A program made the translations under genes and the position numbers. Positions 1 to 14,412 of a stretch of DNA of 64,000 nucleotides are shown here, in pieces. Below the pieces are notes generated by a model. It made no database searches, was not told the origin of the DNA, and saw only the letters and a program-made list of their open reading frames with translations. Location: positions 1-64,000 of the forward strand of contig NIVC01003009.1 in assembly GCA_002269645.1 (NCBI GenBank), read 5' to 3'. Each line of letters begins with the position of its first letter. Within the stretch, counting starts at the first letter, position 1. Source of the DNA: Macrostomum lignano (lineage: Eukaryota).

Positions 1-692
1 CTCAGACGTCGGCGCTGCCGCTGCCGCACTGAGCTCGCTGGACTCGGCAGTTGGTGGCTCGGTGGTTGCTGCGGCCTCGTTGGATGGCAGGGCGCTTGTC
101 TGGCTGGCTCGTCGCAGTCGAGAGACATGCGCTGCTCTGCCTCTGCGCCTGCAGCTCCGGCAGCTGCTCATTCTCTCGCAGGATCTCCTCTGCGTTGCGC
201 AAGAGCTCGCCGGCCGGTGGCTGATCGAGTGGCGGCCTTCCAGACTGCGTCGAGCTCGCATCTGGCCTGCTGGCGGCGGCTGCAGTCGATGGCTCAGCTG
301 TCGGTCAGTCCAAGAAGCTGGCGACACGTAGGCTTCGTTCGGACGATACCGGTGCTCGAGAGAGGGCCGGCAGTCCATCTTTTAGCGCTGGCGCGATTTG
401 CAGCCATATGGCGTGATTATTTGGGTGCACTCACACTAAACTAAACTAGACAACTACTAATGAGAGGAGGCACACAAAGTGCGCTCGCTGAGAGGGTGGG
501 CGACTGCAAGATAAGACTAGGGGTGGGGGGTAGAGATAAAAACAAATGTACAGTGGAATGGAAGGCTAACTAAAGTACTTTTAAGAGCTAAGCTAGGCTA
601 GTCTAACTATTCAACTTCTAATAAGCCTTTCTAGGAAAGGCCTGCAAAAAACTAGAGAATTCTCCTAAGAGTATCCCTCCACGGAAATCTTT
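1..692 (-). mobile_element. 5' part (5' UTR plus start of ORF1) of a second copy of the AlkB-carrying LINE, cut by the window edge
   Basis: 1-692 aligns with 6424-7124 and differs mainly by single-base deletions in homopolymer runs. Homology ends sharply at ...ACGGAAATCTTT (692 and 7124). ORF1 ATG at 408. Confidence 0.9.
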
Positions 693-1261
693 GTTGTTAA
701 AACGAGGTGCCGTCGAAACCGGCGCGGGGTCAGTTCCGAAGAACTCTGCCGCAGTTATATTTTGTATTTGATCGAAAGAATTAAAAATATTTACAAGATT
801 TCGATTTGAATATTTAATACGAATATTGAAATTAAAAATATACATATATAAACTATTTTTCAATATTTTGCAGTATTTTGCACGCATTTGGGATAAAAAA
901 GAGGGGAGGGAAATCCCGCACAAAGAAGGGATCTAATAAAAGCAGGACATCTAAAAAATACGTGCTAGATATTTGAAGGCCTATTGAGAATAAAAGCAAG
1001 ACATTTAAGTAAAAAAAAATAGAGATTAAAAATGCAATAGCGCATATTTGAATTTAGTTGTAAAAATAGAATGAATATAGTAAAGGTGTAAAAAGCAATT
1101 AGTGATATTTGTAGAGCAGTTGGGTAAAAAACACAGTTGGGAAAATTGTAAAAAGAAACGCGAGGAGACATAGAGATTACCTAATCAGTCCTAATGACTG
1201 ATCAACCGATCTCTGTCTCAGGCAGCAAGTTTAGTTTTATTAGTTGCGTTTCAGAGCGTGG

Positions 1262-4050
1262 TCACTTCCGGTTTGGAAGGCTGGTAGCCAGCCTAACCCT
1301 GGGTGGGAATCCCCTGTTTCTTTCCCGACGCCTCATGGCATCCCAGAGGACATTGAGGACAGGGGTTCGGCCCGGAGCCGAGGGCTTCCGGCTCAATGTG
1401 GAAGCTGTGGAGCTTGGCTGCCCTCATCTTGAGCAGCCAAGCCACCCCAGCTGCTTGACCCTGTCTGCGAGCATCGGCATACCTGCCAGCTTGTGCAGGT
1501 ATTCAATGCTGATGTAGGATGGCACACCATAGCAGATACGGAGAGCCAGGTTTTGAATTTTCTGCAATTTGATTTGGTTAGTCGCACAGATTTGGCTCAG
1601 GATTGGCGCTCCGTAGGTGAGAGCGCTTTCTCCGTATGCCCTGTACAGCATTCTGAGGGTGGTGCTACTCAGCTTAGTCATTTTTGCAATTCTGCACAGT
1701 GACATTACAATGGCTCTGCTGGTATCTGCCATGTTGTCCACATGTTTGTTCAGGCAGAGGCTCTGGTCAAGGAGGACACCAGGAATTTCACCTCCTGACA
1801 GTACGGAACCTCAGTGTCCCCAGATACAGTTTGGGTCGCAAGTCCATGCGCCTAGTGGGTTTGTAGTTGAAAGCGATTGCTTTGCTTTTACCGGCATTCA
1901 GTCTAATGCCTTGTTTACCGCACCAGTCAAAGACTCGTCTGAGGTAGCTTTGAAGGGATGTTCGGAGCCCCGCAAAGGTGTCTGCTGAGGCCCAGACGGC
2001 CATGTCGTCTGCGAATTGACTGCGTTTGACGCTTGAGATGGTGGGAGTCGGCATTGAGCTGACGAAGAGGAGGTACAGGAGAGGGCTCAGAATGCCTCCC
2101 TGAGGGACGCCAGCCTGGATGGTGTGGGATCGCTTAGGGCCCCTCGATTCGAACCTGGATCTGTCTGTCTCGCAGGTAGTCAGACAGGATTCGCATGAGC
2201 ATAGGTGGAAAACCATCGGTGAGCATGCTATGCCTGATCTTGTCGTGCCAGGTGGAGTCAAAAGCTGCCTCTGCATCCAGGAAGACTGCAGCGGACTTTT
2301 TAGCTTTGCACTTTGCTACCATGACATCTTGTGCCGACGGCACAGGTTGTCATACGTGGAGTGAATTTTGCGGTAGGCGCATTGGTCATCTCTAGGGTCT
2401 TATTATCCTCAAGGTGCTTGGTGAGTCTTTTTGCTATAAGCTTCTCAAACACTTTGCCCAGACATGAGGTCAGGCTGATTGGTCTGTAGGAGTTGGGGTG
2501 TTCGGCGGTTTGTCCGGCTTGGGGATCATTGTCACCACAGCTTTCTTCCAGGCGCTGGGGAAAATCCCTCGACCGTAGCAGGCGTTGAAGAGGTTAGTGA
2601 GTCTCGTGATTGCCACCCCTCTAAGCCCAGCTTGAGGACGCAGTTGGGAATCTTGTCCAGCCCGGGTGCTCCATCAGGCCTGAGGTGCTCCAGTTCCACA
2701 CTGTGTCTGCCACAGAGAATGCAGCATCAAGTGGGTGGGTCTCAATGGGTTCGATTCCTCAGGAACGGGTAGAATGAGGTGAGCTGTGCCACATCGGCCA
2801 CCTCACGTTTGAGCTGTTCGCATGTGGAAGGGACTGGGCGCATCTTTGAGTCCAGAGTCTCGGCTAGAAGGTTAGCCTTCTCCAGATCTGTGTGCGCAGT
2901 TGTTTGACCCAGGTGAGGCTGGGATCGAGGTTGGCTTAAATTTGCCATCAGCTTTTTAGTGTCATGCCAGAAATTCTTCACTTTCTTGTTCTTGCTGTTT
3001 TCAACAATACTCTCACAGACTTTGGTGAGCTTTCCATTCTGGAAGGAGTTAATTTCTCTCTTTATGCGATTTGCGAGCTGGTTTGCTTGGGTTTTGAAAT
3101 TTTGATCCCGTGTGCTGAAGAAGAGGCGTCTGAGTCGTCTGCGCTCTTTGATCAGGTCGAGGATGTACTTGGTAGGGCGTTTTTGGCACCACAGTCTGGT
3201 ACTGTGGAGTCAATCACGGTGTGAATGGCCTTTGTGATGTGATCCACTTCGGCATTGATTTGGTCAGCATTTGATAATTTAATATTCTGATCTGAGCTCA
3301 AAGCTTCACTGATTTTGAGTCTGAACTCGTCCCAGTTTGTTTTGAGAAGTTTTTGGGTCTGGGGGACCAGCCCATTTCTTCGACTGAATATTGAGCGTGA
3401 GGATTATAGGTAAGTGGTCACTGCCCAGGTCAGGACCCACCTCAAAGTTCTGCACAAATGGGAGAAAGTCCTCAGTGGCCAGGGCGAGGTCCAAGACATT
3501 CCTAGAAATCAGCCCGTTTTTTGGTGGCCAGTCTGGTGAACTGACCGGCTTGATTGAGAATGGTGGGCGAGGTGGGGCCCTCAGACAGCCAGTCGTGCAG
3601 CTGGTAGCCAGCCATGTTGTTGCTGCTGTCACCCCCGAGGAAGCGGTGTCTGGCATTGAGGTCACCCATGAGCACACTGCGCCTACGAGAGAGAAGATTT
3701 TTGAGTAGGTTCAGGTTCAGATGGTACGGTGCTGGAGACCTGTACACCAGAGCGAGATTGAAGTCAGGACCAGAGTTGTCAGACAAGCTCACGGTGCAAG
3801 AGATGGCTTCATGGTTGACATTGTCATACTGCAAGCGCACATTTGTGAGTTTGACGCGAGGAGAGGGCAAGGAGAAGCCCGCGTTTGACTTGCGGGGTAT
3901 CATACCGAATGATGGAGTACCCGGGAATCTGGACAGTGTGACAACTTTTGAGAATGGTCTCAGAAAGAGGGCAATGTCTAGCTCCTGACTGACGACCCAC
4001 TGTGTCAGCTCTCTGATTTTCGGGTTGAATCCCCTGCAGTTTAAATGCAT
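1262..4050 (-). CDS. LINE ORF2: apurinic-like endonuclease plus reverse transcriptase (frameshifted)
   Basis: APE motifs LKIMHLNCRG, MGDLNARH, GSDHLPI. RT motifs AVFLDAEAAFDSTWH, GVPQGGILSPLLYLLF, FADD. C-terminal LYRAY...LTYGAP...KLQKIQNLALR typical of Jockey/I elements. Confidence 0.9.
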
Positions 4051-4136
4051 AATCTTCAGGGCTGTGGTTTGATTGTTTGAGTCTACAGTTAACGCACTGA
4101 AGTTTCAATTCAAGTCTTGAGTTTAGCTGCCTGAGA

Positions 4137-6837
4137 CTAGGACTCAGTGGTCATGCCAGCCATGCCCGGCACTTCCTGGAGTGCAGCCCGCACAATGTCC
4201 TCAACCATTTTACTGGTTGATTCCACAGTGAGGACCTCCCCAGGCGGTCGGGACAGGGCCTGCACAACCACTTGAGTCAGAGAGCGGGTGATCAGGGGCA
4301 ACAGCATGCTCACCACGACATAAAGTCACTAAGCTGCAGCTGCACCGCCTGGCCGGCATCAGCTGACGGAGCAGTCGCATTGACATCAGACTCGGTCTCT
4401 GCCGCCGGAGCGCTCCTGGCATCATCGGTCACGATGACAAGCGGCCGGATCGCGGCGGGTACCGGCACCGTGCGCCTGCCTCGGCGGATCAGCCAGCCGC
4501 TGTCGGAGTCGTCGTCGGCGGCGGCGTCGTCGGTCTCACTTGACACTGGGGCAGCAGCGGCCGCAGCTTCCGCAGCTCGCGCCGCGGCTTTGGCCTCAGC
4601 AGCCGCTCTGGTCGCCTTGTCGTGCTCCGCCTTGGCGACGGTGCAGGCTCGACTGGTGGTTCGGTGCGAGCCGCCGCAGTTGGCGCAGACCGCTGGGCCC
4701 TCGTGCTGGCACTCCTTCCAGGAATGCTGGCCGCCGCAAATCCGGCAGCGCTGCTGCCCCCGACACTGGGCAGCGCGGTGGCCGAACTCCTGGCAGCGCT
4801 GGCATTGCAGAGCGCGGACCGGCTCGTCTGTGCGGCTGTCCTCGCAGTTGAACTTCAAGAAGTCGGTGCAGATGCCATCGCGGAGGCACTTCTCGTAGGT
4901 CATCGCCGACTTTGTGAAGATGCGCACGAACTGGGTTGCCTTCCCAGTCGCTCTGGCTCGGATTCTGTGGACGCTGACAATGTCCAGCTTGAGCGTGCCG
5001 CGCAACAGGGTCGCGAAGTCAGCCTCCGAGAATGCGAGGGCACCTCAGTAGCGACGAAGGTGCGTACCGGCTGCTGCTGCACTCTGTCGGGCCCTGTTCT
5101 GTTGTCCAGCGGTCGGGCTCGGGCTGGACGGCGCTTTACGGGATGCTCGAGCAGCTTCTCCTCGCGCAGCGCGCCGCCCAGGAAGACGTTGTAGTCCCGC
5201 TCCGACGCTGGGAACACGAGATAGGCCGGCTGATTCGCCATCGGCGCAGTGTTGACGGCTCTAGCTTCGCCGGCAAAGTTGGTCTGCAGCCAGGCAACGA
5301 ACTGCATCAGCTTGTTGGCCGCGTCCCGGTGCACCTCAAAACGATCGGCGGGATGGCAGCCTGGGGCCTTCTGGGTGGCGCAGGGCGCGCCGCAACCTGC
5401 GCGTAGGGCCGCGCTGCCGCAGCCGCCTGCGCGCTTGTCGCCGAAGCCGCCGCCGCACCGGCCGGCCAGGAAGCCGCCGAAGCCGCCGCCGCACCGGACG
5501 CCGCGCCGCGACCTCCTCGCCTGCCTCGCTGGTGGCCGCCACGGCCGCGCCGACCCGATCGCCTTCGCGGTCTCGCCTCGCCGTCGCCTGCCGCTCCTGG
5601 GGCCTGTCGTCGCCCCGGCCGCCCTGGTCGTCGTCGTGGCCGCCTTGGTCGTCGTCCCGACCGCCTTGGTCGTCGCCGAATGGGCCGCCGTTTAGCGGCT
5701 GGCTGTAGGTCGGGTCATCCGGCAGAGCTCGCTTGCGCCGCAGCTCCGGCTTGGTGACACGGAATGTTAGCGAGATGCGGACGCCATTCTGAGAGTGGGC
5801 GGCGGGCACCTGGTGCTGCAGGCGTTTCTGGCAGTTTCCTGCCATCAGAATCAGCGAGCCTGGCAGCGTTGGAAAGCGGTGCGTCACGTTGCCGTCCCGA
5901 CGGCGCAGCATGAACAGCCGCTCAGCACCGAAGGACACGGTCGCGATCGTCGGCCTGTCGCCGAGCTCATCCTCATCGTCCGAGTGCCAGGGAATCCGGT
6001 CTCCCGGCTCGGTGTAGAAGTTCACCAACACGGAGTTGAACTTCGGGACATCGAACTGGGTATCATGGTAAATGAAGTCACGAATGTCTTTAATTACCTG
6101 ATGCCAGTTTAGATTTTCCTTCAGCTCAACCCCGCTGTAGGTGTACGACGGGCCGATCCAGTAGACGCGGCGCTGCTCACTCGACGATGCTGAAAGGCTT
6201 GAGGCAGCAGGTCGGTGATCAGGCGCTCGTAGACTTGGTCCGCGACCTCGCTCAGGAACTTGGGCGCATAGATGATGGTGCTGTCGCTAGCGTAGATCGT
6301 CTGCTGACAGTCAGTCAAGTCAGGCTCATCAGGGAAGATGATTTGACTGATGTCAGCGTCCAGTTGCTCGGCAGGGGGCTTTGGCAGCGTCGAGGCCTGG
6401 TCTGCAGCCGATTGCTGGCGCTCCTCAGACGTCGGCGCTGCCGCTGCCGCACTGAGCTCGCTGGACTCGGCAGTTGGTGGCTCGGTGGTTGCTGCGGCCT
6501 CGTTGGATGGCAGGGCGCTTGTCTGGCCTGGCTCGTCGCAGTCGAGAGACATGCGCTGCTCTGCCTCTGCGCCTGCAGCCTCCGGCAGCTGCTCATTCTC
6601 TCGCAGGATCTCCTCTGCGTTGCGCAAGAGCTCGCCGGCCGGTGGGCTGATCGAGTGGCGGCCTTCCAGACTGCGTCGAGCTCGCATCAGGCCTGCTGGC
6701 GGCGGGCTCGCAGTCGATGGCTCAGCTGTCGGCGTCAGTCCAAGAAGCTGGCGACCGTAGGCTTCGTTCGGACGATACCGGTGCTCGAGAGAGGGCCGGC
6801 AGTCCATCTTTTTAGCGCTGGCGCGATTTGCAGCCAT
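4137..6837 (-). CDS. LINE ORF1 (about 900 aa reconstructed across frameshifts): low-complexity N-terminus, AlkB domain, gag-like region with three zinc knuckles
   Basis: Track ORFs 6121-6837, 5336-6031, 4900-5334 and 4310-5005 join by frame changes. YAQVAA...AIPPIVL gag-like motif near 5340-5410. Knuckles CQRCQEFGHRAAQC, CRICGGQHSWKEC, CANCGGSHRTTSRAC. Likely stop after MAGMTTES at 4137-4139. Confidence 0.8.
5759..6290 (-). CDS. AlkB-family 2OG-Fe(II) dioxygenase domain (ALKBH2/3-like) inside LINE ORF1
   Basis: RRVYWIGPSYTYSG...FNSVLVNFYTEPGDRIPWHSDDEDELGDRPTIATVSFGAERLFMLR...PGSLILMAGNCQKRLQHQVP...RISLTFR. HxD at 5978-5986, distal His in QHQVP, RxxxxxR ending 5759. One frameshift near 6175-6200. 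Confidence 0.92.
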
Positions 6838-7397
6838 ATGGCGTGATTATTTGGGTACACTCAAACTAAACCTAAACTACAACTAACTAATGAGTCAGGA
6901 GGCACACAAAGTGCGCTCGCTGAGAGGGGTGGGGCGACTGCAAGATAAGACTAGGGGTGGGGTAGAGATAAAAACAAATGTACAGTGGAATGGAAGGCTA
7001 ACTAAAGTACTTTCAAGAGCTAAGCTAGGCTAGTCTAAACTATTCAACTTCCAATAAGCCTTTCTAGGAAAGGCCTGCAAAAACTAGAGAATTCTCCTAA
7101 GAGTATCCCTCCACGGAAATCTTTAGTAAAAGGCGAAAGATTTAATCGTGGAATGAAGAGAAACCAGAGTTGAAGTTAAACAAGTCTGGGTAGCTTTTTT
7201 TATGTAGAAAATTCTGTAACCGCTTTAATTAAACATTCGTTTTCATAAAGCATTCGTTCCTGGAATGCCAATCTCTCTACTGACATAAGTGGAACTATTT
7301 GCGCATGAAAGTTAGTTTTTGTCTAGGCCTACGCAAACTGTTTTTTTCTATGCTGTAGAGAGTGGGAAGGATAGGCAGTAAAATTTCGGTAATTTTT

Positions 7398-8267
7398 TTA
7401 AAACTTCATAGTAAGTCTTTTCTGAAGTAGCCACTGGTTAGCGAGGGTGATGACCTCTTCTTTGGACTCGAAGCGGTGCCCACGGAGTGGCCACTTGAGC
7501 TGACGGAATAGATGAAAATCGGAGGGTGCCAGGTCTGGTGAATAGGCCGGATGTGGGAGGATTTCGAACCCCGCAGTGGTGGCAGCATTCACCGCAACCT
7601 GGGCAGTGTGAGCTGAGGCATTGTCGTGAAGCAGCAAGGGGGCCAGCACTCAGCTTCCCCCGCTTCTTCTGGACCACTGCCTGACGAAACCGGCCCAGCT
7701 GTTCGGAGGACCAGACACCTGTGACAGTGTGCCTAACAGACAGGTACTCGGCGAGCAGGATCCCCTGAAAGTCCCAGAAGAAACAGCCCTGGAATCTCGC
7801 TTAGACACGGGGGTCCATAGTGGCAGATCCAGCACTCATCCCCAGTAATGATTCATCGCTCAAATCCATCCAGGTTCTCATTGTAGAGGTCAGGCAGTAG
7901 TCCCGACGAGAAAGCATTCGGGGCGCTACTGCCTCAACTTTTATGGCTCACCCTGCCACGCTTGAATTCGTTGTAAAGTCGCTCGATGGTGCGCAGAGAG
8001 GGACAAGTTGTGGGGTACAGACTTTATCTTCTCCTCAATTGCAAAATTTAATATGAGGGCTCGGTATTTCTGCTTGTGTGTGCATTTTGCGGAAAATTCA
8101 GGGGGTGCTTAAAGTTCGTGCAGAAAAGATACAGTTAAAAAGACATGAAAAGAAAACACTGCACCCTATAAATTCTATATAAAAGTACTTTAAAAAGCCG
8201 AAAAAAATATTAAAAAAAAGCTTTTGAAATGGCTGAACGGCAAAACTATAGATTTGAACCACCCTCG
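7398..8267 (-). mobile_element. Decayed, internally deleted mariner (DD34D) with one TIR left
   Basis: Fragments CPSLRTIERLYNEFKRGR, IITGDECWICHY, LLLHDNASAH...HPAYSPDLAPSDFHLF, with stops and frameshifts. TIR-like end TA|CGAGGGTGGTTCAAAT at 8252-8269. No second TIR found. Confidence 0.88.
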
Positions 8268-8789: not shown

Positions 8790-9505
8790 AGAGAGACAGA
8801 ATTGCAGAGAGACAGAATTGCAGAGAGACAGAATTGCAGAGAGACAGAATTGCAGAGAGACAGAATTGCAGACAGACAGAATTGCAGAGACAGAATTGCA
8901 GAGAGACAGAATCGCAGACAGACAGAATTGCAGACAGATAGAATTGCAGAAATACAGAGTTGCAGACAGACAGAATTGCAGGCAGACAGAATCGCAGACA
9001 GATAGAATTGCAGAAATACAGAGTTGCAGACGGACAGAATCGCAGACAGACAGACTTGCAGACAGATAGAATTGCAGAAATACAGAGTTGCAGACAGACA
9101 GAATTGCAGACAGACAGAATTGCAGACATACAGAATTGCAGACAGACAGAATTGCAGACAGACAGAATTGCAGGCAGACAGAATCGCAGGCAGACAGAAT
9201 TGCAGGCAGACAGAATCGCAGGCAGACAGAATTGCAGACAGACAGAATCGCAGGCAGACAGAATTGCAGACAGACAGAATTGCAGACAGACAGAATTGCA
9301 GACAGACAGAATCTCAGGCAGACAGAATTGCAGACATACAGAATTGCAGACAGAAAAAATTGCAGACAGACAGAATTGCAGACATACAGAATTGCAGACA
9401 GACAGAATCGCAGGCAAACAGAATCGCAGACAGAAGCAGACAGGCGGCACAGAAGCAGACAGGCGGCACAGAAGCAGACAGGCGGCACAGAAGCAGACAG
9501 GCGGC
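8790..9505. repeat. 16-bp minisatellite (GCAGACAGACAGAATT) ending in a few 19-bp units
   Basis: Direct tandem periodicity. Confidence 0.95.
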
Positions 9506-10021: not shown

Positions 10022-10427
10022 TGCAGCATCTGACACGGATGACACTTACAGCATCTGACACAGATGGACACTTACAGCATCTGACACAGATGGACACTTA
10101 CAGCATCTGACACAGATGGACACTTACAGCATCTGACAAAGATAGACACTTACAGCATCTGACAAAGATAGACACTTACAGCATCTGACACAGATGGACA
10201 CTTACAGCATCTGACACAGATAGACACTTACATCATCTGACACAGATGGACACTTACAGCATCTGACACAGATATGACACTTACAGCATCTGACACTGAT
10301 AGACACTTACAGCATCGGACACAGATGGACACTTACAGCATCTGACAAAGATGGACGCTTACAGCATGACAAAGATGACACTTACAGCATCTGACACAGA
10401 TAGACACTTACAGCATCTGACACAAAT
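10022..10427. repeat. 26-bp minisatellite (GCATCTGACACAGATGGACACTTACA)
   Basis: About 15 tandem units. Confidence 0.95.
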
Positions 10428-10698
10428 GGTTTTCGTAGCGCTTTGATACAGTTTGACATGAATTGGGAATATTTGAGCATCGGATATGTACCGTTTTAAA
10501 AAGCGCTTTGTTTCATTTCATTTGTTTAATGCTATTAAGTACCGATATAGCCATCAAATTTTCCTTTTTGGCTTGTATTATTTTGTGCCAACTTTTCAAA
10601 AAGGATGAAGTCTGAATCTTACTACTGTCAGTAGGTAAAAAGTTATATATAAACATATACTCGTAAATAAACAAATTAACTACTCGTATATACCACAG

Positions 10699-11265: not shown

Positions 11266-11835
11266 TTTTATGTTGGCTACTTACAGTAGGACAGTTGAGA
11301 CTTTTTGTGCGGTTTACCACAACAACGGAAAACACGGCTGACTTTAATATCATTTTTTATACTTTTGAATACACCTACAGTATTGTTTACTATTATACTC
11401 TACACTAAGTGCAATTAAAACTACTGCGGTAGATTTAGATTATTACGAGAGAGACAATAAATAAACGAATAAATAACGTCGCAGTGACTTCCTAATCGTA
11501 ATTGACAACTTCTGCTGGATAAACAAGTTGACGTGTATTTTATTAGTGGCAAGTTAGTAGTATACCCAGAATATTTACTCTTTAATTTACTCAGGAAATC
11601 AGCCATACGTCTAGTAATAGAGCGAAGTAAGAGTAGAAAAAATAAATTACAGAAAGCGCATTTTTCAATTTCATATCATTTTAATTCTGCGAAGCGATAA
11701 GCCACTAACAAAGGTTCTAATGCTGTCACGGAGGTGTATTAGTGAAACTGACAAGCCTGCTTAGCATGGAGCAATAGAGCATATCATAGTGTATATTGGT
11801 CGAGTAAGTACATTGCTGGCTTTTAATTTCAAGAA

Positions 11836-13045
11836 CTCCAGCTCCCCAACTCCAGCTCCCCAACTCCAGCTCCCCAACTCCAGCTCCCCAACTCCAGTTG
11901 CCCAACTCCAGTTCCCCAACTCCAGCTCCCCAACTCCAATTCCCCAACTCCAGCTCCCCAACTCCAGTTCCCCAACTCCAGCTCCCCAACTCCAATTCCC
12001 CAACTCCAGTTCCCCAACTCCAGTTCCCCAACTCCAACTCCCCAACTCCAGCTCCCCAACTCCAGCTCCCCAACTCCAACTCCCCAACTCCAGCTCCCCA
12101 ACTCCAATTCCCCAACTCCAGCTCCCCAACTCCAATTCCCCAACTCCAGCTCCCCAACTCCAATTCCCCAACTCCGATTCCCCAACTCCAGCTAACCAAC
12201 TCCAGTTCCCCAACTCCAGCTCCCCAACTCCAGCTCCCCAACTCCAACTCCCCAACTCCAGCTAACCAACTCCGATTCCCCAACTCCAGCTAACCAACTC
12301 CAATTCCCCAACTCCAGTTCCCCAACTCCAGCTCCCCAACTCCAGTTCCCCAACTCCAGCTCCCCAACTCCAGTTGCCCAACTCCAGTTCCCCAACTCCA
12401 GCTCCCCAACTCCAATTCCCCAACTCCAGCTCCCCAACTCCAGTTCCCCAACTCCAGCTCCCCAACTCCAATTCCCCAACTCCAGTTCCCCAACTCCAGT
12501 TCCCCAACTCCAACTCCCCAACTCCAGCTCCCCAACTCCAGCTCCCCAACTCCAACTCCCCAACTCCAGCTCCCCAACTCCAATTCCCCAACTCCAGCTC
12601 CCCAACTCCAATTCCCCAACTCCAGCTCCCCAACTCCAATTCCCCAACTCCGATTCCCCAACTCCAGCTAACCAACTCCAGTTCCCCAACTCCAGCTCCC
12701 CAACTCCAGCTCCCCAACTCCAACTCCCCAACTCCAGCTAACCAACTCCGATTCCCCAACTCCAGCTAACCAACTCCAACTCCCCAACTCCAGCTCCCCA
12801 ACTCCAATTCCCCAACTCCGATTCCCCAACTCCAGCTAACCAACTCCAATTCCCCAACTCCGATTCCCCAACTCCAGCTCCCCAACTCCAATTCCCCAAC
12901 TCCGATTCCCCAACTCCAGCTAACCAACTCCAATTCCCCAACTCCGATTCCCCAACTCCAGCTAACCAACTCCAATTCCCCAACTCCAATCCCCAACTCA
13001 AATTCCCCAACTCCAATTCCCCAACTCCAACTCCCCAACTCCAAC
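11836..13045. repeat. 14-bp minisatellite (CCCCAACTCCAGCT) with a 476-bp higher-order duplication
   Basis: Tandem periodicity. Identical variant patterns at offset 476 (track ORFs 11898 and 12374 translate identically). Confidence 0.95.
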
Positions 13046-13754
13046 TCCTAACTTCAGTTCTGTGCTCAGTGGAAACAGCAAATGATGTGGACTAGAGAGA
13101 TCATAAGGAATCCGAATAAGCAGAATTAGCTAGCTAATTAAAATTAAATAAGCGAGAAAATTGAAATTATTTTTTTTGAAACTAAACTTGGATAAGCAGT
13201 AAAAACATCGAAACTTATAATAATAGTATAAGAAGAAAGGATAATTTAACAAAACAGGAATGATGACGCTGGGACAACCCAATACGTAAAGATTCGAAAA
13301 CAGATGAAACGCACACACGCTGTCAGTGCTGCGGAGATGTGTTGCTAATAGCCCTCACCGATGAGAATTCAATGCGCAAGCGGTTCCATCTTCAGAAGAT
13401 TGGCTGGAATAGATAAATTGATATAGTAGGCTAGATCTATTCCAGATTCCGGGCCAATATAAAACCGGATACTAACTGAAGACTTATATTTGTAATTCTA
13501 AGTGCCAGACAGTATCTGCAACTTATGCCTTAGGCTTACACATCTGTGAGTGCCTATGTGTGTGTGAATCTGGTCTGATAAACAGAAGTTGTGCATTTAC
13601 ATGTATAACAGCCTTAGTTGTTAGTCACGTGAACTACGCTGGGCACAGGGCCAGTTGGGCACCCCGCTTGGCATTCAGCCAGTCAGCAAGGGGGTGAGAG
13701 AATTTCGCATCTTTGCAAGAACTTCCTAGCTCAGTTCAGTTAAAGAGCGGTTCT

Positions 13755-14412
13755 GATGGGAGATTGTTGAGTTTAGTTTGATGGGAGATTGTTGAGTTTA
13801 GTTTGATGGGAGATTGTTGAGTTTAGTTTGATGAGAGATTGTTGAGTTTAGTTTGATGAGAGATTGTTGAGTTTAGTTTGATAGGAGATTGTTGAGTTTA
13901 GTTTGATAGGAGATTGTTGAGTTTTGTTTGATGGGAGATTGTTGAGTTTAGTTTGATGGGAGATTGTTGAGTTTAGTTTGATGAGAGATTGTTGAGTTTA
14001 GTTTGATGAGAGATTGTTGAGTTTAGTTTGATAGGAGATTGTTGAGTTTAGTTTGATGAGAGATTGTTGAGTTTAGTTTGATGGGAGATTGTTGAGTTTA
14101 GTTTGATGGGAGATTGTTGAGTTTAGTTTGATGGGAAATTGTTGAGTTTAGTTTGATGGGAGATTGTTGAGTTTAGTTTGATGGGAGATTGTTGAGTTTA
14201 GTTTAATTGGAGATTGTTGAGTTTAGTTTGATGGGAAATTGTTGAGTTTAGTTTGATGGGAGATTGTTGAGTTTAGTTTGATGGGAAATTGTTGAGTTTA
14301 GTTTGATGGGAAATTGTTGAGTTTTGTTTGATTGGAGATTGTTGAGTTTAGTTTGATGGGAAATTGTTGAGTTTAGTTTGATGGGAGATTGTTGAGTTTA
14401 GTTTGATGGGAG
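13755..14412. repeat. 25-bp minisatellite (GATGGGAGATTGTTGAGTTTAGTTT)
   Basis: About 26 tandem units, ending about 25 nt from the sortilin stop codon. Confidence 0.95.

What the first reader, a model, noticed from the sequence alone, without database searches (positions are those of the whole stretch)
4137..6837. A LINE retrotransposon carrying its own AlkB (ALKBH3-like) nucleic-acid demethylase in ORF1
Seen: an intronless AlkB domain with complete catalytic motifs (NxY, HSD, QHQVP, RISLTFR) and the YTYSG lid segment. It lies between the ORF1 start, which belongs to the repeated unit (duplicated at 1-692), and the gag-like CCHC knuckles, directly upstream of APE-RT. Established: ALKBH2/3-type enzymes oxidatively remove m1A/m3C, and ALKBH3 acts on ssDNA and RNA. 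These Watson-Crick-face marks stall reverse transcriptases. Some plant RNA viruses carry AlkB domains that repair RNA. AlkB is not part of the canonical Jockey/I ORF1. Inference: ORF1p coats the element RNA, so this would be a cis-acting template-repair or anti-silencing enzyme that cleans the retroelement RNA or nascent cDNA before or during target-primed reverse transcription. I cannot confirm from here that the arrangement is unreported.
Basis: partly seen in the sequence, partly recalled or inferred. Interest (0 to 1): 0.92.

Follow-up and report, generated by a model that had tools for sequence, protein, structure and literature searches.

The report
Flatworm LINE encoding its own AlkB demethylase
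A jumping gene (LINE retrotransposon) of the flatworm Macrostomum lignano carries an intact-looking ALKBH3-type nucleic-acid demethylase fused to its RNA-binding coat protein; the same fusion is conserved in diverged relatives, I found no report of it in the open literature, and it suggests that methylated bases on the template limit retrotransposition.

Summary
On the minus strand, window 6837-4137 is ORF1 of an APE+RT LINE. ORF1 reads: low-complexity N-terminus, ALKBH3-like Fe(II)/2OG dioxygenase with every catalytic residue, linker, two RRM folds, three CCHC knuckles.

The window copy is broken by 1-bp deletions, 27 of 28 in homopolymers. These are private to this copy and are probably assembly errors. 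Sister copies in the Macrostomum lignano assembly GCA_002269645.1 carry AlkB and gag in one frame and an intact 944-aa ORF2.

The fusion is not a one-off. Intact ORF1s of 757-962 aa with the same architecture, followed by APE-RT, occur in several diverged subfamilies. AlkB is the most conserved part of ORF1 (dN/dS about 0.1).

The AlkB fold matches human ALKBH3 and ALKBH2, not ALKBH5 or FTO. The likely activity is therefore removal of m1A/m3C-type, RT-blocking methyl groups from the element's own RNA or cDNA. That step is inferred, not shown.

No report of an AlkB-bearing LINE turned up. An orchid Ty3/Gypsy ALKBH5-like ORF and plant-virus AlkB domains are precedents. I rate it a new variant of a known kind.

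The parts
693..7124 (-). One complete 6,432-bp repeat unit of the head-to-tail array. It holds the U5 3' part, 5' UTR, ORF1, ORF2 and 3' UTR. The 3' end reads ...GTTTTAACAAC, with no poly(A).
1..692 (-). 5' part of the next unit downstream in element orientation, cut by the window start. It holds the U5 3' part, the 5' UTR and the first codons of ORF1.
   Evidence: 96% identity to 6424-7124
7057..7172 (-). Full-length U5 snRNA (Rfam RF00020, 83.7 bits, gathering score 40). Nt 1-48 (7172-7125) are upstream flank. Nt 49-117 (7124-7057) are the first bases of the repeat unit.
6838..7056 (-). 5' UTR between the U5-like segment and the ORF1 ATG
4137..6837 (-). ORF1, about 900 codons. In the window copy it is broken by five private 1-bp deletions at 6184, 5557, 5342, 5041 and 4317.
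5744..6279 (-). ALKBH3-like Fe(II)/2-oxoglutarate dioxygenase domain. Motifs: NxY within 6034-6014, HxD within 5989-5972, H within 5821-5804, RxxxxxR within 5779-5744. There is a frame break at 6184.
5335..5743 (-). Low-complexity G/R/D/A-rich linker
4832..5334 (-). Two RRM-fold modules (beta-alpha-beta-beta-alpha-beta twice). Pfam does not detect them; they are predicted by AlphaFold2 and match tandem-RRM proteins in Foldseek.
4643..4804 (-). Three CCHC zinc knuckles (4804-4763, 4747-4709, 4687-4643)
4140..4642 (-). ORF1 C-terminal region: an A-rich stretch, then a segment alignable across the family. Function unknown.
1262..4050 (-). ORF2 (APE endonuclease + reverse transcriptase), measured from its first ATG. 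About 20 private 1-bp deletions in the window copy. Intact at 944 aa (stop-to-stop) in L001:5555-8386.
3393..4050 (-). APE-type endonuclease domain
1869..2669 (-). Reverse transcriptase domain (FADD box at 2018-1992)
693..1261 (-). AT-rich 3' UTR ending in TTTTAACAAC

Best explanation
Shown:
- Window 7124-693 (minus strand) is one unit of a young, probably still active, APE+RT non-LTR retrotransposon of Macrostomum lignano.
- Its ORF1 protein is a type-I (RRM + CCHC) LINE chaperone. It has gained an N-terminal Fe(II)/2-oxoglutarate dioxygenase of the ALKBH2/ALKBH3 subfamily with all metal- and 2OG-binding residues.
- The fusion is the ancestral state of a small LINE lineage with several diverged subfamilies. 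AlkB is the best-conserved part of their ORF1.
- In M. lignano the element lies as head-to-tail arrays inside U5 snRNA genes, at U5 nt 48/49.

Inferred:
- ORF1p binds the RNA that encoded it, so the tethered dioxygenase would work in cis.
- It would remove N1-methyladenine/N3-methylcytosine-type methyl groups from single-stranded element RNA, and possibly from the nascent cDNA or the exposed target strand.
- These modifications sit on the Watson-Crick face. They block reverse transcriptases and impair translation, so removing them would let full-length target-primed reverse transcription proceed.
- Whether the methyl groups are chemical damage or marks placed by the host as a restriction is open.
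For: Identity and source:
- P0168 (M. lignano BOX15_Mlig027759g8) is 96% identical to the ORF1 RRM region.
- Three tandem units in NIVC01002892.1 are 99% identical to the window unit.

AlkB class:
- Pfam 2OG-FeII_Oxy_2, E=1e-22.
- Best solved-structure relatives by sequence are human ALKBH3 (3e-23), then ALKBH2 (2e-15).
- The AlphaFold2 model has pLDDT 91.9. Foldseek ranks ALKBH3 first (E 1.5e-17, TM 0.84-0.86) and ALKBH2 next (TM 0.85). ALKBH5 and FTO reach only TM 0.61-0.67.
- NxY, HxD, H and RxxxxxR are invariant in all 7 aligned family ORF1s. 38 of the 65 invariant columns lie in AlkB.

In frame with gag:
- L001:16252-18444 is 731 aa running from AlkB to the C-terminus.
- P0324 and P0326 show the same from two other contigs.

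Lineage:
- P0170, P0171, P0182 and P0184 are intact, collinear ORFs of 757-962 aa.
- They are followed by APE, or by APE plus RT.
- ORF2 of L003 is 39% identical to the M. lignano ORF2 over its full length and 44% in RT. That compares with about 34% for RTs of unknown ORF1 context.

Selection:
- For P0170 vs P0171, AlkB has dN 0.23 and dN/dS about 0.10. RRM+CCHC has 0.28 and 0.17. The linker has 0.71 and 0.43.
- P0182 vs P0184 gives the same ranking of dN.

Youth and integrity:
- Units differ by 0.16-0.8% substitutions, against 1.9-2.7% in their flanks.
- 27 of 28 window-private deletions lie in homopolymers.

Type-I ORF1:
- Two RRM folds and three CCHC knuckles.

Mechanistic logic (established knowledge, not tested here):
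- ALKBH3 acts on m1A/m3C in ssDNA and RNA.
- These bases stall RTs.
- AlkB domains of plant flexiviruses repair viral RNA.
- LINE ORF1p shows cis preference.
Against: - No biochemical, expression or retrotransposition data exist for this element.
- dS is saturated, so the dN/dS values are approximate.
- The AlkB phylogeny is weak. The clade of transposon AlkBs has 23% bootstrap on 149 columns, so a single acquisition is likely but not proven.
- Only M. lignano and one unidentified organism (SRA runs SRR31628392-437) are known to carry the LINE fusion.
- ALKBH3 has also been reported to act on other substrates such as tRNA. In human L1, m6A favours retrotransposition and the eraser ALKBH5 suppresses it (PMC7873242, abstract seen). 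'Demethylation helps the element' is therefore not a universal rule.
- Every M. lignano copy examined sits in a U5 gene, and three of the four loci share flanks. Part of the copy number could come from locus duplication rather than transposition.
Confidence: 0.55

Rival explanations
1. Epitranscriptomic counter-defence. The host deliberately marks transposon RNA (m1A, m3C or m6A) to block its translation, stability or reverse transcription. The ORF1-borne AlkB erases that mark. On this reading it is an anti-silencing factor rather than a damage-repair enzyme.
For: - There is a precedent in a retroelement. The orchid Ty3/Gypsy paALKBH5-like protein demethylates m6A ssRNA in vitro, and its authors propose this role (PMC9289625).
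- Strong, long-term conservation of the domain in a selfish element fits an arms-race function.
- A related AlkB sits upstream of a Penelope-like RT/GIY-YIG ORF. This hints that different retroelement classes profit from it.
Against: - The fold is ALKBH2/3-type, not ALKBH5/FTO-type. m6A is therefore not the expected main substrate.
- No host m1A- or m3C-based transposon restriction is known (my knowledge).
- No sign of positive selection was seen. dN is lowest in AlkB.
Confidence: 0.25
2. DNA-directed role. The dioxygenase acts on single-stranded DNA at the integration site or on the first-strand cDNA. It could repair 1mA/3mC in exposed ssDNA, or remove DNA base methylation at the target. It would not act on the RNA template.
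For: - ALKBH3 and ALKBH2, the closest structures, are DNA repair enzymes. The top Foldseek hits are ALKBH3-ssDNA complexes.
- Target-primed reverse transcription exposes ssDNA (established knowledge).
Against: - The domain is fused to the RNA-binding ORF1p (two RRMs and three knuckles), not to ORF2p, which contacts the DNA.
- ORF1p of LINEs chiefly coats RNA (established knowledge).
Confidence: 0.12
3. One-off capture, chimeric assembly, or a host ALKBH3 retrogene that merely abuts a LINE. In that case AlkB has no role in the element.
For: - In the window as assembled, AlkB, the RRMs, the knuckles and ORF2 lie in different frames, separated by stops.
- Three of the four M. lignano loci share flanks, so they could be copies of one locus.
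Against: - The frame breaks are private homopolymer deletions.
- Other copies read through from AlkB to the ORF1 C-terminus.
- The same architecture occurs in intact, 29-31% identical ORF1s followed by APE-RT in independent short-read assemblies.
- The catalytic residues are invariant and dN/dS is about 0.1.
- The host ALKBH3-type gene is a different protein.
Confidence: 0.03
4. The AlkB domain is kept as a catalytically silent nucleic-acid-binding or oligomerisation module of ORF1p.
For: No activity data exist. Some AlkB-family members have weak or unknown activities (my knowledge).
Against: The whole Fe(II) triad and both 2OG-binding arginines are invariant across subfamilies whose AlkB domains are only 38-45% identical to this one. 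A pure binding module would not need this.
Confidence: 0.05

Closest known systems
Type-I ORF1 LINEs of the Jockey superfamily/group (Khazina & Weichenrieder types; Metcalfe & Casane 2014, PMC4120745)
   Same: - Two ORFs.
- ORF1 has RRM(s) immediately upstream of CCHC knuckles.
- ORF2 has an N-terminal APE endonuclease and an RT.
- The nearest named RTs are annotated 'jockey' or 'BS'.
   Different: - It has an N-terminal AlkB dioxygenase. AlkB is not among the ORF1 domains catalogued in 448 Repbase elements: RRM, CCHC, coiled coil, CTD, PHD, esterase and zf/lz.
- The host is a flatworm. The clade within the superfamily was not assigned.
- It inserts site-specifically into U5 genes.
Orchid (Phalaenopsis) Ty3/Gypsy elements with a paALKBH5-like ORF (PMC9289625)
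   Same: A retrotransposon that encodes its own AlkB-family dioxygenase. That protein demethylates ssRNA in vitro, and the authors read it as protection of the element's RNA.
   Different: - It is an LTR element in plants.
- AlkB lies in a separate additional ORF, not fused to the RNA chaperone.
- It belongs to the ALKBH5 (m6A eraser) subfamily, whereas this one is ALKBH2/3-type.
- It was acquired recently in one orchid lineage.
AlkB domains in replicase polyproteins of plant positive-strand RNA viruses (Flexiviridae and others; my knowledge)
   Same: An ALKBH3/bacterial-AlkB-like domain is embedded in a protein of an RNA-templated replicator. It is reported to remove m1A/m3C from RNA and is thought to keep the genome copyable.
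   Different: They are viruses, and the domain sits in the replicase rather than in a nucleic-acid chaperone. No sequence comparison with viral AlkBs was made here.
Human ALKBH3 (PDB 2IUW, 8JNK, 8JNR)
   Same: - Best sequence and fold match: 33-34% identity, TM 0.84-0.86.
- Same catalytic residues.
   Different: - ALKBH3 is a stand-alone cellular repair and RNA-demethylation enzyme.
- The M. lignano ALKBH3-type protein (P0341/P0256) falls in a separate clade from the transposon AlkBs.
CR1/L2 LINEs whose ORF1 carries an esterase domain (PMC3905857; PMC4120745)
   Same: They are a precedent for an enzymatic accessory domain in a LINE ORF1p within the same superfamily.
   Different: The enzyme is different (an SGNH-type esterase, proposed to be lipid-related), and the hosts are vertebrates.
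snRNA-gene-specific transposons: Keno and Utopia (U2), Dada-U1 and Dada-U6 (PMC4640811)
   Same: They insert at one fixed position of a multicopy snRNA gene. Tandem insertions occur occasionally.
   Different: - The target here is U5. That 2015 paper lists only U2, U1 and U6 as reported snRNA-gene targets.
- Each unit here carries its own U5-like 3' part at its 5' end.

Membership tests
AlkB family, ALKBH2/ALKBH3 subfamily of Fe(II)/2-oxoglutarate dioxygenases | Match to the family profile (Pfam PF13532) above the curated cut-off | tested here: met
   81.7 bits against a cut-off of 31.2 for the window copy. 79.8 bits for L001:16252-18444.
AlkB family, ALKBH2/ALKBH3 subfamily of Fe(II)/2-oxoglutarate dioxygenases | Fe(II) triad HxD...H, plus 2OG-binding NxY and RxxxxxR | tested here: met
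   WHSDDE, LQHQVP, VNFY and RISLTFR align with the ALKBH3 catalytic motifs. They are invariant in 7 family ORF1s.
AlkB family, ALKBH2/ALKBH3 subfamily of Fe(II)/2-oxoglutarate dioxygenases | Double-stranded beta-helix fold closest to ALKBH3/ALKBH2 rather than ALKBH5, FTO or E. coli AlkB | tested here: met
   The AF2 model has pLDDT 91.9. Foldseek gives ALKBH3 E 1.5e-17 with TM 0.84-0.86, ALKBH2 TM 0.85, E. coli AlkB TM about 0.73, and ALKBH5/FTO TM 0.61-0.67.
AlkB family, ALKBH2/ALKBH3 subfamily of Fe(II)/2-oxoglutarate dioxygenases | Oxidative demethylation of m1A/m3C in ssDNA or RNA | not testable with these tools
   Needs recombinant protein and modified oligonucleotides.
AlkB family, ALKBH2/ALKBH3 subfamily of Fe(II)/2-oxoglutarate dioxygenases | Orthology to animal ALKBH3 (placement inside the animal ALKBH3 clade) | tested here: not met
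   In the NJ tree the transposon AlkBs group together (bootstrap 23%), outside the clade that holds human ALKBH3 and the M. lignano host-type P0341. They are ALKBH3-like, not ALKBH3 orthologues. Support is weak.
APE-type non-LTR retrotransposon (LINE), Jockey superfamily/group | ORF2 with an N-terminal APE endonuclease followed by a reverse transcriptase | tested here: met
   Exo_endo_phos_2 at 2e-11 and RVT_1 at 1.7e-36 in the intact 944-aa ORF2 L001:5555-8386. Fragments of both are found in the window.
APE-type non-LTR retrotransposon (LINE), Jockey superfamily/group | Type-I ORF1: RRM immediately upstream of CCHC knuckle(s) | tested here: met
   Two RRM-fold modules, each with pLDDT about 90. 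The top Foldseek hits are all tandem-RRM proteins. Three CX2CX4HX4-6C knuckles are present. Pfam zf-CCHC passes its cut-off in relative P0184.
APE-type non-LTR retrotransposon (LINE), Jockey superfamily/group | RT phylogeny places it in a named clade (Jockey, CR1, L2, Rex1, Daphne, Crack) | tested here: inconclusive
   The only named relatives are auto-annotated 'jockey' or 'BS' lepidopteran proteins at 31-32% identity. No Repbase or RTclass1 reference set was available.
APE-type non-LTR retrotransposon (LINE), Jockey superfamily/group | Footprints of target-primed reverse transcription: 5'-truncated copies, target-site duplication, variable 3' junction | tested here: inconclusive
   - L014 holds a copy truncated to its last 576 bp, placed after U5 nt 1-62 plus 8 filler nt.
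- AAAGATTTCCGTGG(AG) is a candidate 14-16-bp TSD.
- The 3' junctions vary: AAC, AACAAC, AACAACAAA.
- Only 4 loci were examined, and homopolymer errors confound the junction variation.
Target-specific LINEs of multicopy small-RNA genes (Keno/Utopia-like behaviour) | All copies inserted at the same nucleotide of the target gene, in independent gene copies | tested here: met
   - U5 nt 48/49 is the junction in the window, L001, L013 and L014.
- The L001 flank is unalignable with the other three beyond about 126 bp upstream.
- The units are 3-10 times less diverged than the flanks.
- The L013 array is closed by the U5 3' half.
Target-specific LINEs of multicopy small-RNA genes (Keno/Utopia-like behaviour) | Genome-wide: no, or few, copies outside the target gene | not testable with these tools
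   No searchable M. lignano genome was available. Only contigs reached through exact-protein look-ups were seen.

The most novel reading that the evidence does not exclude
A lineage of autonomous LINEs needs its own ALKBH3-type demethylase, carried on the RNA chaperone, to complete retrotransposition. That would show that Watson-Crick-face base methylation (m1A/m3C) on transposon RNA or cDNA is a real barrier to target-primed reverse transcription, whether it arises chemically or is imposed by the host. Retroelements of different classes (LINE, Penelope-like, Ty3/Gypsy, RNA viruses) would then have recruited AlkB enzymes convergently to overcome it. In M. lignano the same element also lives only in U5 snRNA genes. 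It rebuilds a complete U5 at its 5' end, so it may borrow the snRNA promoter.
Probability: 0.35. Interest if true: 0.85.

Novelty: new variant of a known kind. Interest (0 to 1): 0.74.

Why it matters
LINE ORF1 proteins are regarded as chaperones. The only enzymatic accessory domain described for them so far is an esterase.

A conserved, catalytically complete ALKBH3-type dioxygenase on ORF1p would be the first nucleic-acid-modifying enzyme in a LINE chaperone. It makes a concrete hypothesis testable: that RT-blocking base methylation limits retrotransposition, and that elements pay to remove it.

It links three separate observations: AlkB domains in plant RNA viruses, an ALKBH5-like ORF in orchid Gypsy elements, and now LINEs with possibly a Penelope-like element. 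Together they point to a general theme of replicators erasing methyl marks on their templates.

Macrostomum lignano is a transgenic-capable model flatworm, so knock-down and mutant-element assays are realistic. The compact ssRNA/ssDNA demethylase domain (about 190 aa), naturally fused to an RNA binder, may also interest tool builders.

The U5 snRNA gene specificity adds a new target to the short list of snRNA-gene-specific transposons.

Tried and rejected
- Exact-protein look-up of the window's 231-aa AlkB ORF: not on record.
- Word-indexed homologue search with the AlkB domain alone: only about 200-aa stand-alone AlkBs at 39% identity or less. This wrongly suggested an orphan. The exhaustive HMMER search and the gag-region query were what revealed the family.
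- Metagenome scan with the RRM-CCHC alignment: 239 pattern hits, none confirmed.
- Rfam on the 11 related short-read contigs: no U5 or other RNA family. U5 association is therefore shown only for the M. lignano family.
- blastn of those contigs against all M. lignano sequence in hand: no hits. Their organism could not be identified, and the SRA accession prefixes appear in no paper in the library.
- Biopython bootstrap with its own distance calculator timed out. I replaced it with a numpy distance plus NJ.
I repeated it with the P0324 substring.
- I considered whether the lid hairpin is shorter than in ALKBH2/3. The length varies among family members, so I dropped the claim.
- A MIR8562 hit in L001 (58 bits against a gathering score of 211) was treated as chance.
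- A majority-state comparison of the four copies was used only to count open frames. The sequence was never printed, and the scratch file it had been written to was removed afterwards.


Full report
**1. What is in the window**

The feature lies on the minus strand. Six-frame translation of 1-7200 and Pfam give the following order, with coordinates:
- an ATG at 6837;
- a low-complexity N-terminus;
- a 2OG-FeII_Oxy_2 (AlkB) domain, E=1.1e-22, 81.7 bits against a cut-off of 31.2;
- a G/R/D-rich linker;
- a region ending in three CCHC knuckles (4804-4643);
- a stop at 4139-4137;
- an APE endonuclease and a reverse transcriptase (4050-1262).

Positions 1-692 repeat 6424-7124.

**2. State of the window copy**

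ORF1 and ORF2 are not open as assembled. ORF1 is split over three frames and ORF2 over about ten pieces.

I aligned the window unit with three sister units from L001. Nearly all differences are 1-bp deletions private to the window copy: five in ORF1 (6184, 5557, 5342, 5041, 4317) and about twenty in ORF2. Only 13 columns carry substitutions.

Of the 28 private deletions, 27 fall in homopolymer runs, mostly of 3-6 bases. Indels outnumbering substitutions several-fold, and sitting in homopolymers, is the signature of long-read assembly error rather than decay.

Real sister copies read through:
- L001:16252-18444 is a 731-aa piece with AlkB, linker, RRMs, knuckles and C-terminus in one frame.
- L001:5555-8386 is an uninterrupted 944-aa ORF2 with Exo_endo_phos_2 (2e-11) and RVT_1 (1.7e-36).

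When the state held by most copies is taken at each column, ORF1 is about 900 codons and ORF2 is 944. I did not print a repaired element.

**3. Source**

The gag-region query hit P0168, 'hypothetical protein BOX15_Mlig027759g8, partial [Macrostomum lignano]'. It is 96% identical and carries PF13532.

Its contig NIVC01002892.1 (GCA_002269645.1) holds three abutting units 99% identical to the window unit. Two further contigs of the same assembly carry the element: NIVC01003829.1 (L013) and NIVC01002030.1 (L014). The window therefore comes from M. lignano.

**4. Is AlkB part of the element?**

The exhaustive HMMER search with the AlkB piece is the key result. After the self-hits, the best matches among 1.84 billion representatives are long proteins, not ordinary AlkBs of about 200 aa.

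P0170 (962 aa), P0171 (757 aa), P0182 (843 aa) and P0184 (892 aa) are intact ORFs. Their order of parts is the same: N-terminus, AlkB, low-complexity linker, an RRM-like region and three CCHC knuckles.

On their contigs they are followed by APE or APE-RT ORFs:
- In L003, ORF1 is at 1752-4283 and a 948-aa APE+RT ORF2 at 4710-7556.
- L002 and L009 show an APE ORF directly after ORF1.

ORF2 of L003 is 39% identical to the M. lignano ORF2 over 940 residues, and 44% in the RT core. RTs found without ORF1 context reach about 34%.

M. lignano itself has at least two more diverged subfamilies:
- P0172/P0173/P0174/P0319, which are UniProt Fe2OG proteins with the same AlkB-RRM-knuckle order.
- P0176, for which only an AlkB fragment is known.

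The unidentified organism of SRA runs SRR31628392-437 has at least five subfamilies: P0170, P0171, P0182, P0184 and P0196. The fusion is therefore a lineage character, not a one-off capture or an assembly chimera.

**5. Selection**

In the 7-sequence ORF1 alignment, 38 of 65 invariant columns lie in the AlkB domain. They include NxY, HxD, the distal H and RxxxxxR.

Nei-Gojobori estimates on two subfamily pairs give:

| Pair | Region | dN | dN/dS |
|---|---|---|---|
| P0170/P0171 | AlkB | 0.23 | about 0.10 |
| P0170/P0171 | RRM+CCHC | 0.28 | 0.17 |
| P0170/P0171 | linker | 0.71 | 0.43 |
| P0170/P0171 | C-terminus | 0.46 | 0.34 |
| P0182/P0184 | AlkB | 0.30 | not estimable (dS saturated) |
| P0182/P0184 | RRM+CCHC | 0.32 | 0.17 |
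| P0182/P0184 | linker | 0.66 | not estimable (dS saturated) |

dS is saturated, so the ratios are rough. The ranking is clear: AlkB is constrained at least as strongly as the nucleic-acid-binding core.

**6. What kind of AlkB**

By sequence, the best solved-structure relatives are human ALKBH3 (3e-23), then ALKBH2 (2e-15). E. coli AlkB does not reach 1e-3.

An AlphaFold2 model of the domain has pLDDT 91.9 and pTM 0.89. Foldseek against the PDB gives:
- ALKBH3-ssDNA complexes: E 1.5e-17, TM 0.84-0.86, 33-34% identity;
- ALKBH2: TM 0.85;
- E. coli AlkB: TM about 0.73;
- ALKBH5 and FTO: TM 0.61-0.67.

An NJ tree (149 columns, 200 bootstraps) puts all transposon-borne AlkBs in one group. That group lies outside the animal ALKBH3 clade, which contains human ALKBH3 and the M. 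lignano host-type protein P0341/P0256. It also lies apart from a C2H2-AlkB paralogue (P0178). Support for the transposon group is only 23%.

So the domain is ALKBH3-like in structure. It is neither the host ALKBH3 nor a recent copy of it. Its origin is unresolved.

**7. The rest of ORF1**

Pfam sees only a weak zinc knuckle in the window. An AlphaFold2 model of the region between the linker and the first knuckle shows two beta-alpha-beta-beta-alpha-beta modules, each with pLDDT about 90. Its top 50 Foldseek hits are essentially all RRM-containing proteins, led by tandem-RRM proteins such as Pub1, HuR and nucleolin.

This is the type-I ORF1 of Khazina and Weichenrieder: RRM upstream of CCHC. 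A survey of 448 Jockey-superfamily elements lists RRM, CCHC, coiled coil, CTD, PHD, esterase and zf/lz as ORF1 domains, but no AlkB (PMC4120745).

**8. Genomic setting: U5 snRNA genes and tandem arrays**

Rfam finds one family above threshold in the whole window: a full-length U5 snRNA at 7172-7057 on the minus strand (83.7 bits, gathering score 40).

The repeat unit begins at U5 nt 49 (AAAGATTTCCGTGG...). The upstream flank supplies U5 nt 1-48, ending in the invariant loop CGCCUUUUACU.

The same junction is present in L001, L013 and L014. In L013 the array is closed by a second, canonical U5 3' half with a stem, an Sm site and a terminal hairpin. Arrays of units are therefore inserted in U5 genes at nt 48/49.

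Other details:
- Units abut head to tail, with a 3' end of ...GTTTTAACAAC and small junction variation.
- L014 has a copy truncated to its last 576 bp. It is preceded by U5 nt 1-62 plus 8 filler nt. This fits a second nick about 14 nt downstream and a 14-16-bp target-site duplication.

Evidence on independence of the loci:
- The L001 far-upstream flank is unalignable with the other three loci.
- The other three flanks differ by 1.9-2.7% substitutions.
- The units differ by only 0.16-0.8%.

The units are thus younger than the loci. This points to recent, site-specific insertion, though gene conversion is an alternative.

Kojima and Jurka (PMC4640811) state that only U2 (Keno, Utopia), U1 and U6 (Dada) had been reported as snRNA-gene targets. 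Two literature searches found no U5-specific element.

It is not resolved why each unit carries its own U5-like 3' part, a variant that differs from the closing half. The options are a U5-derived LINE 5' end, co-transcription from the U5 promoter, or template switching onto U5 snRNA. The related contigs from the other organism show no U5.

**9. Mechanism**

Shown:
- a catalytically complete ALKBH2/3-type dioxygenase;
- covalent linkage to a two-RRM, three-knuckle LINE chaperone;
- conservation under purifying selection in an autonomous, young element.

Inferred from established knowledge:
- ALKBH3 removes m1A and m3C from ssDNA and RNA.
- These bases block Watson-Crick pairing and stall RTs.
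- LINE ORF1p binds its own mRNA in cis.
- AlkB domains of plant flexiviruses repair viral RNA.

The most economical reading is cis demethylation of the element's RNA, and possibly of the cDNA. This would keep the RNA translatable and fully copyable. I give the whole chain, identity plus mechanism, about 0.55. The identity part alone is near certain.

The main rival keeps the same chemistry but changes the source of the methyl groups to host-installed marks, which would make the domain a counter-defence. This is the interpretation offered for the orchid Gypsy ALKBH5-like protein (PMC9289625). A DNA-directed role is less likely because the domain rides on the RNA-binding protein. A silent binding module is unlikely given the invariant catalytic residues.

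**10. Comparison with what is known, and novelty**

Retroelement- or virus-encoded AlkBs are known. One is the orchid Ty3/Gypsy element: ALKBH5-type, in a separate ORF, in plants. The others are the plant RNA virus replicases. Enzymatic accessory domains in LINE ORF1 are also known (esterase).

Six literature searches that bore on AlkB-carrying retrotransposons or U5-targeting elements found no LINE with an AlkB domain. Repbase and Dfam could not be searched, so an unpublished database entry cannot be excluded.

I rate it a new variant of a known kind: a LINE lineage with a new, conserved enzymatic module, plus a new snRNA-gene target.

**11. Also seen**

A 1,012-aa ORF with an AlkB domain (P0320) lies directly upstream of an RT + GIY-YIG ORF on contig L005 from another SRA run. 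That arrangement is the hallmark of a Penelope-like element. Its AlkB groups with the LINE AlkBs. If confirmed, AlkB has been taken up by, or exchanged between, two retroelement classes.

Noticed in passing
window 7057-7172 (-); L013 1123-1238 and 12115-12190; L001 2483-2598; L014 9071-9122: A full-length U5 snRNA spans the 5' boundary of the LINE array. Every unit starts at U5 nt 49, and in L013 the array is closed by a second, canonical U5 3' half. The element therefore appears to be U5-snRNA-gene specific, a target absent from the published list of snRNA-gene-specific transposons (U2, U1, U6).
   Followed up: yes
window 693/692 junction; L001 8987/8988 and 15438/15439; L013 5660/5661; L014 9708/9709 and 16161/16162: Full-length units abut head to tail with no poly(A). 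The 3' end is TTTTAAC(AAC)(A)n joined to AAAGATTTCC. The LINE 3' end resembles the U5 loop sequence upstream of the insertion point (CGTTTTAACAAC against CCTTTTACT). This may let new copies insert at existing junctions and so build arrays.
   Followed up: partly
window 693-7124, and probably the whole window: 27 of 28 copy-private 1-bp deletions lie in homopolymer runs. The window's assembly seems to carry homopolymer-compression errors, so apparent frameshifts elsewhere in the window should be read with caution.
   Followed up: yes
L005 2120-5158 and 5542-7398 (Logan SRR19430222): A 1,012-aa ORF with an AlkB domain (residues 530-665) lies directly upstream of an ORF with weak RVT_1 and GIY-YIG matches, which is a Penelope-like arrangement. 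The contig ends in (CAGT)n-like repeats. Its AlkB falls among the LINE AlkBs in the NJ tree.
   Followed up: partly
L003 4346-4717; L007 3269-3643; L008 3177-3551: A 123-124-aa ORF with no Pfam match lies between ORF1 and ORF2 in the P0182/P0184 subfamilies. It is absent from the M. lignano element, where only 35 nt separate the two ORFs.
   Followed up: no
window 4140-4330 (-) and the aligned C-termini of P0170, P0171, P0182, P0184 and P0319: A short segment at the extreme C-terminus of ORF1, after the knuckles and a low-complexity stretch, can be aligned across the family. Its function is unknown.
   Followed up: no
window 7398-7649 (-): Remnant of a DDE_3 (mariner/Tc1-type) transposase (E=3.5e-6, just under the Pfam cut-off), about 230 bp upstream of the U5 gene.
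   Followed up: partly
window 8790-9434, 10024-10429, 11834-13048, 13754-14000+: Four satellite arrays with periods of 16, 26, 14 and 25 bp. The 16-mer array is shared at 87% identity with the L001 upstream flank.
   Followed up: no
L013 12226-12290: About 115 bp downstream of the array there is a decayed second copy of 'TTTTAACAA + U5-3'-half-like' sequence. It may be the relic of an older, extremely 5'-truncated insertion.
   Followed up: no
L013 1171-5662: The first unit of this array has two internal deletions (unit positions about 993-2779 and 3983-4161). The first removes most of ORF1, including AlkB.
   Followed up: no
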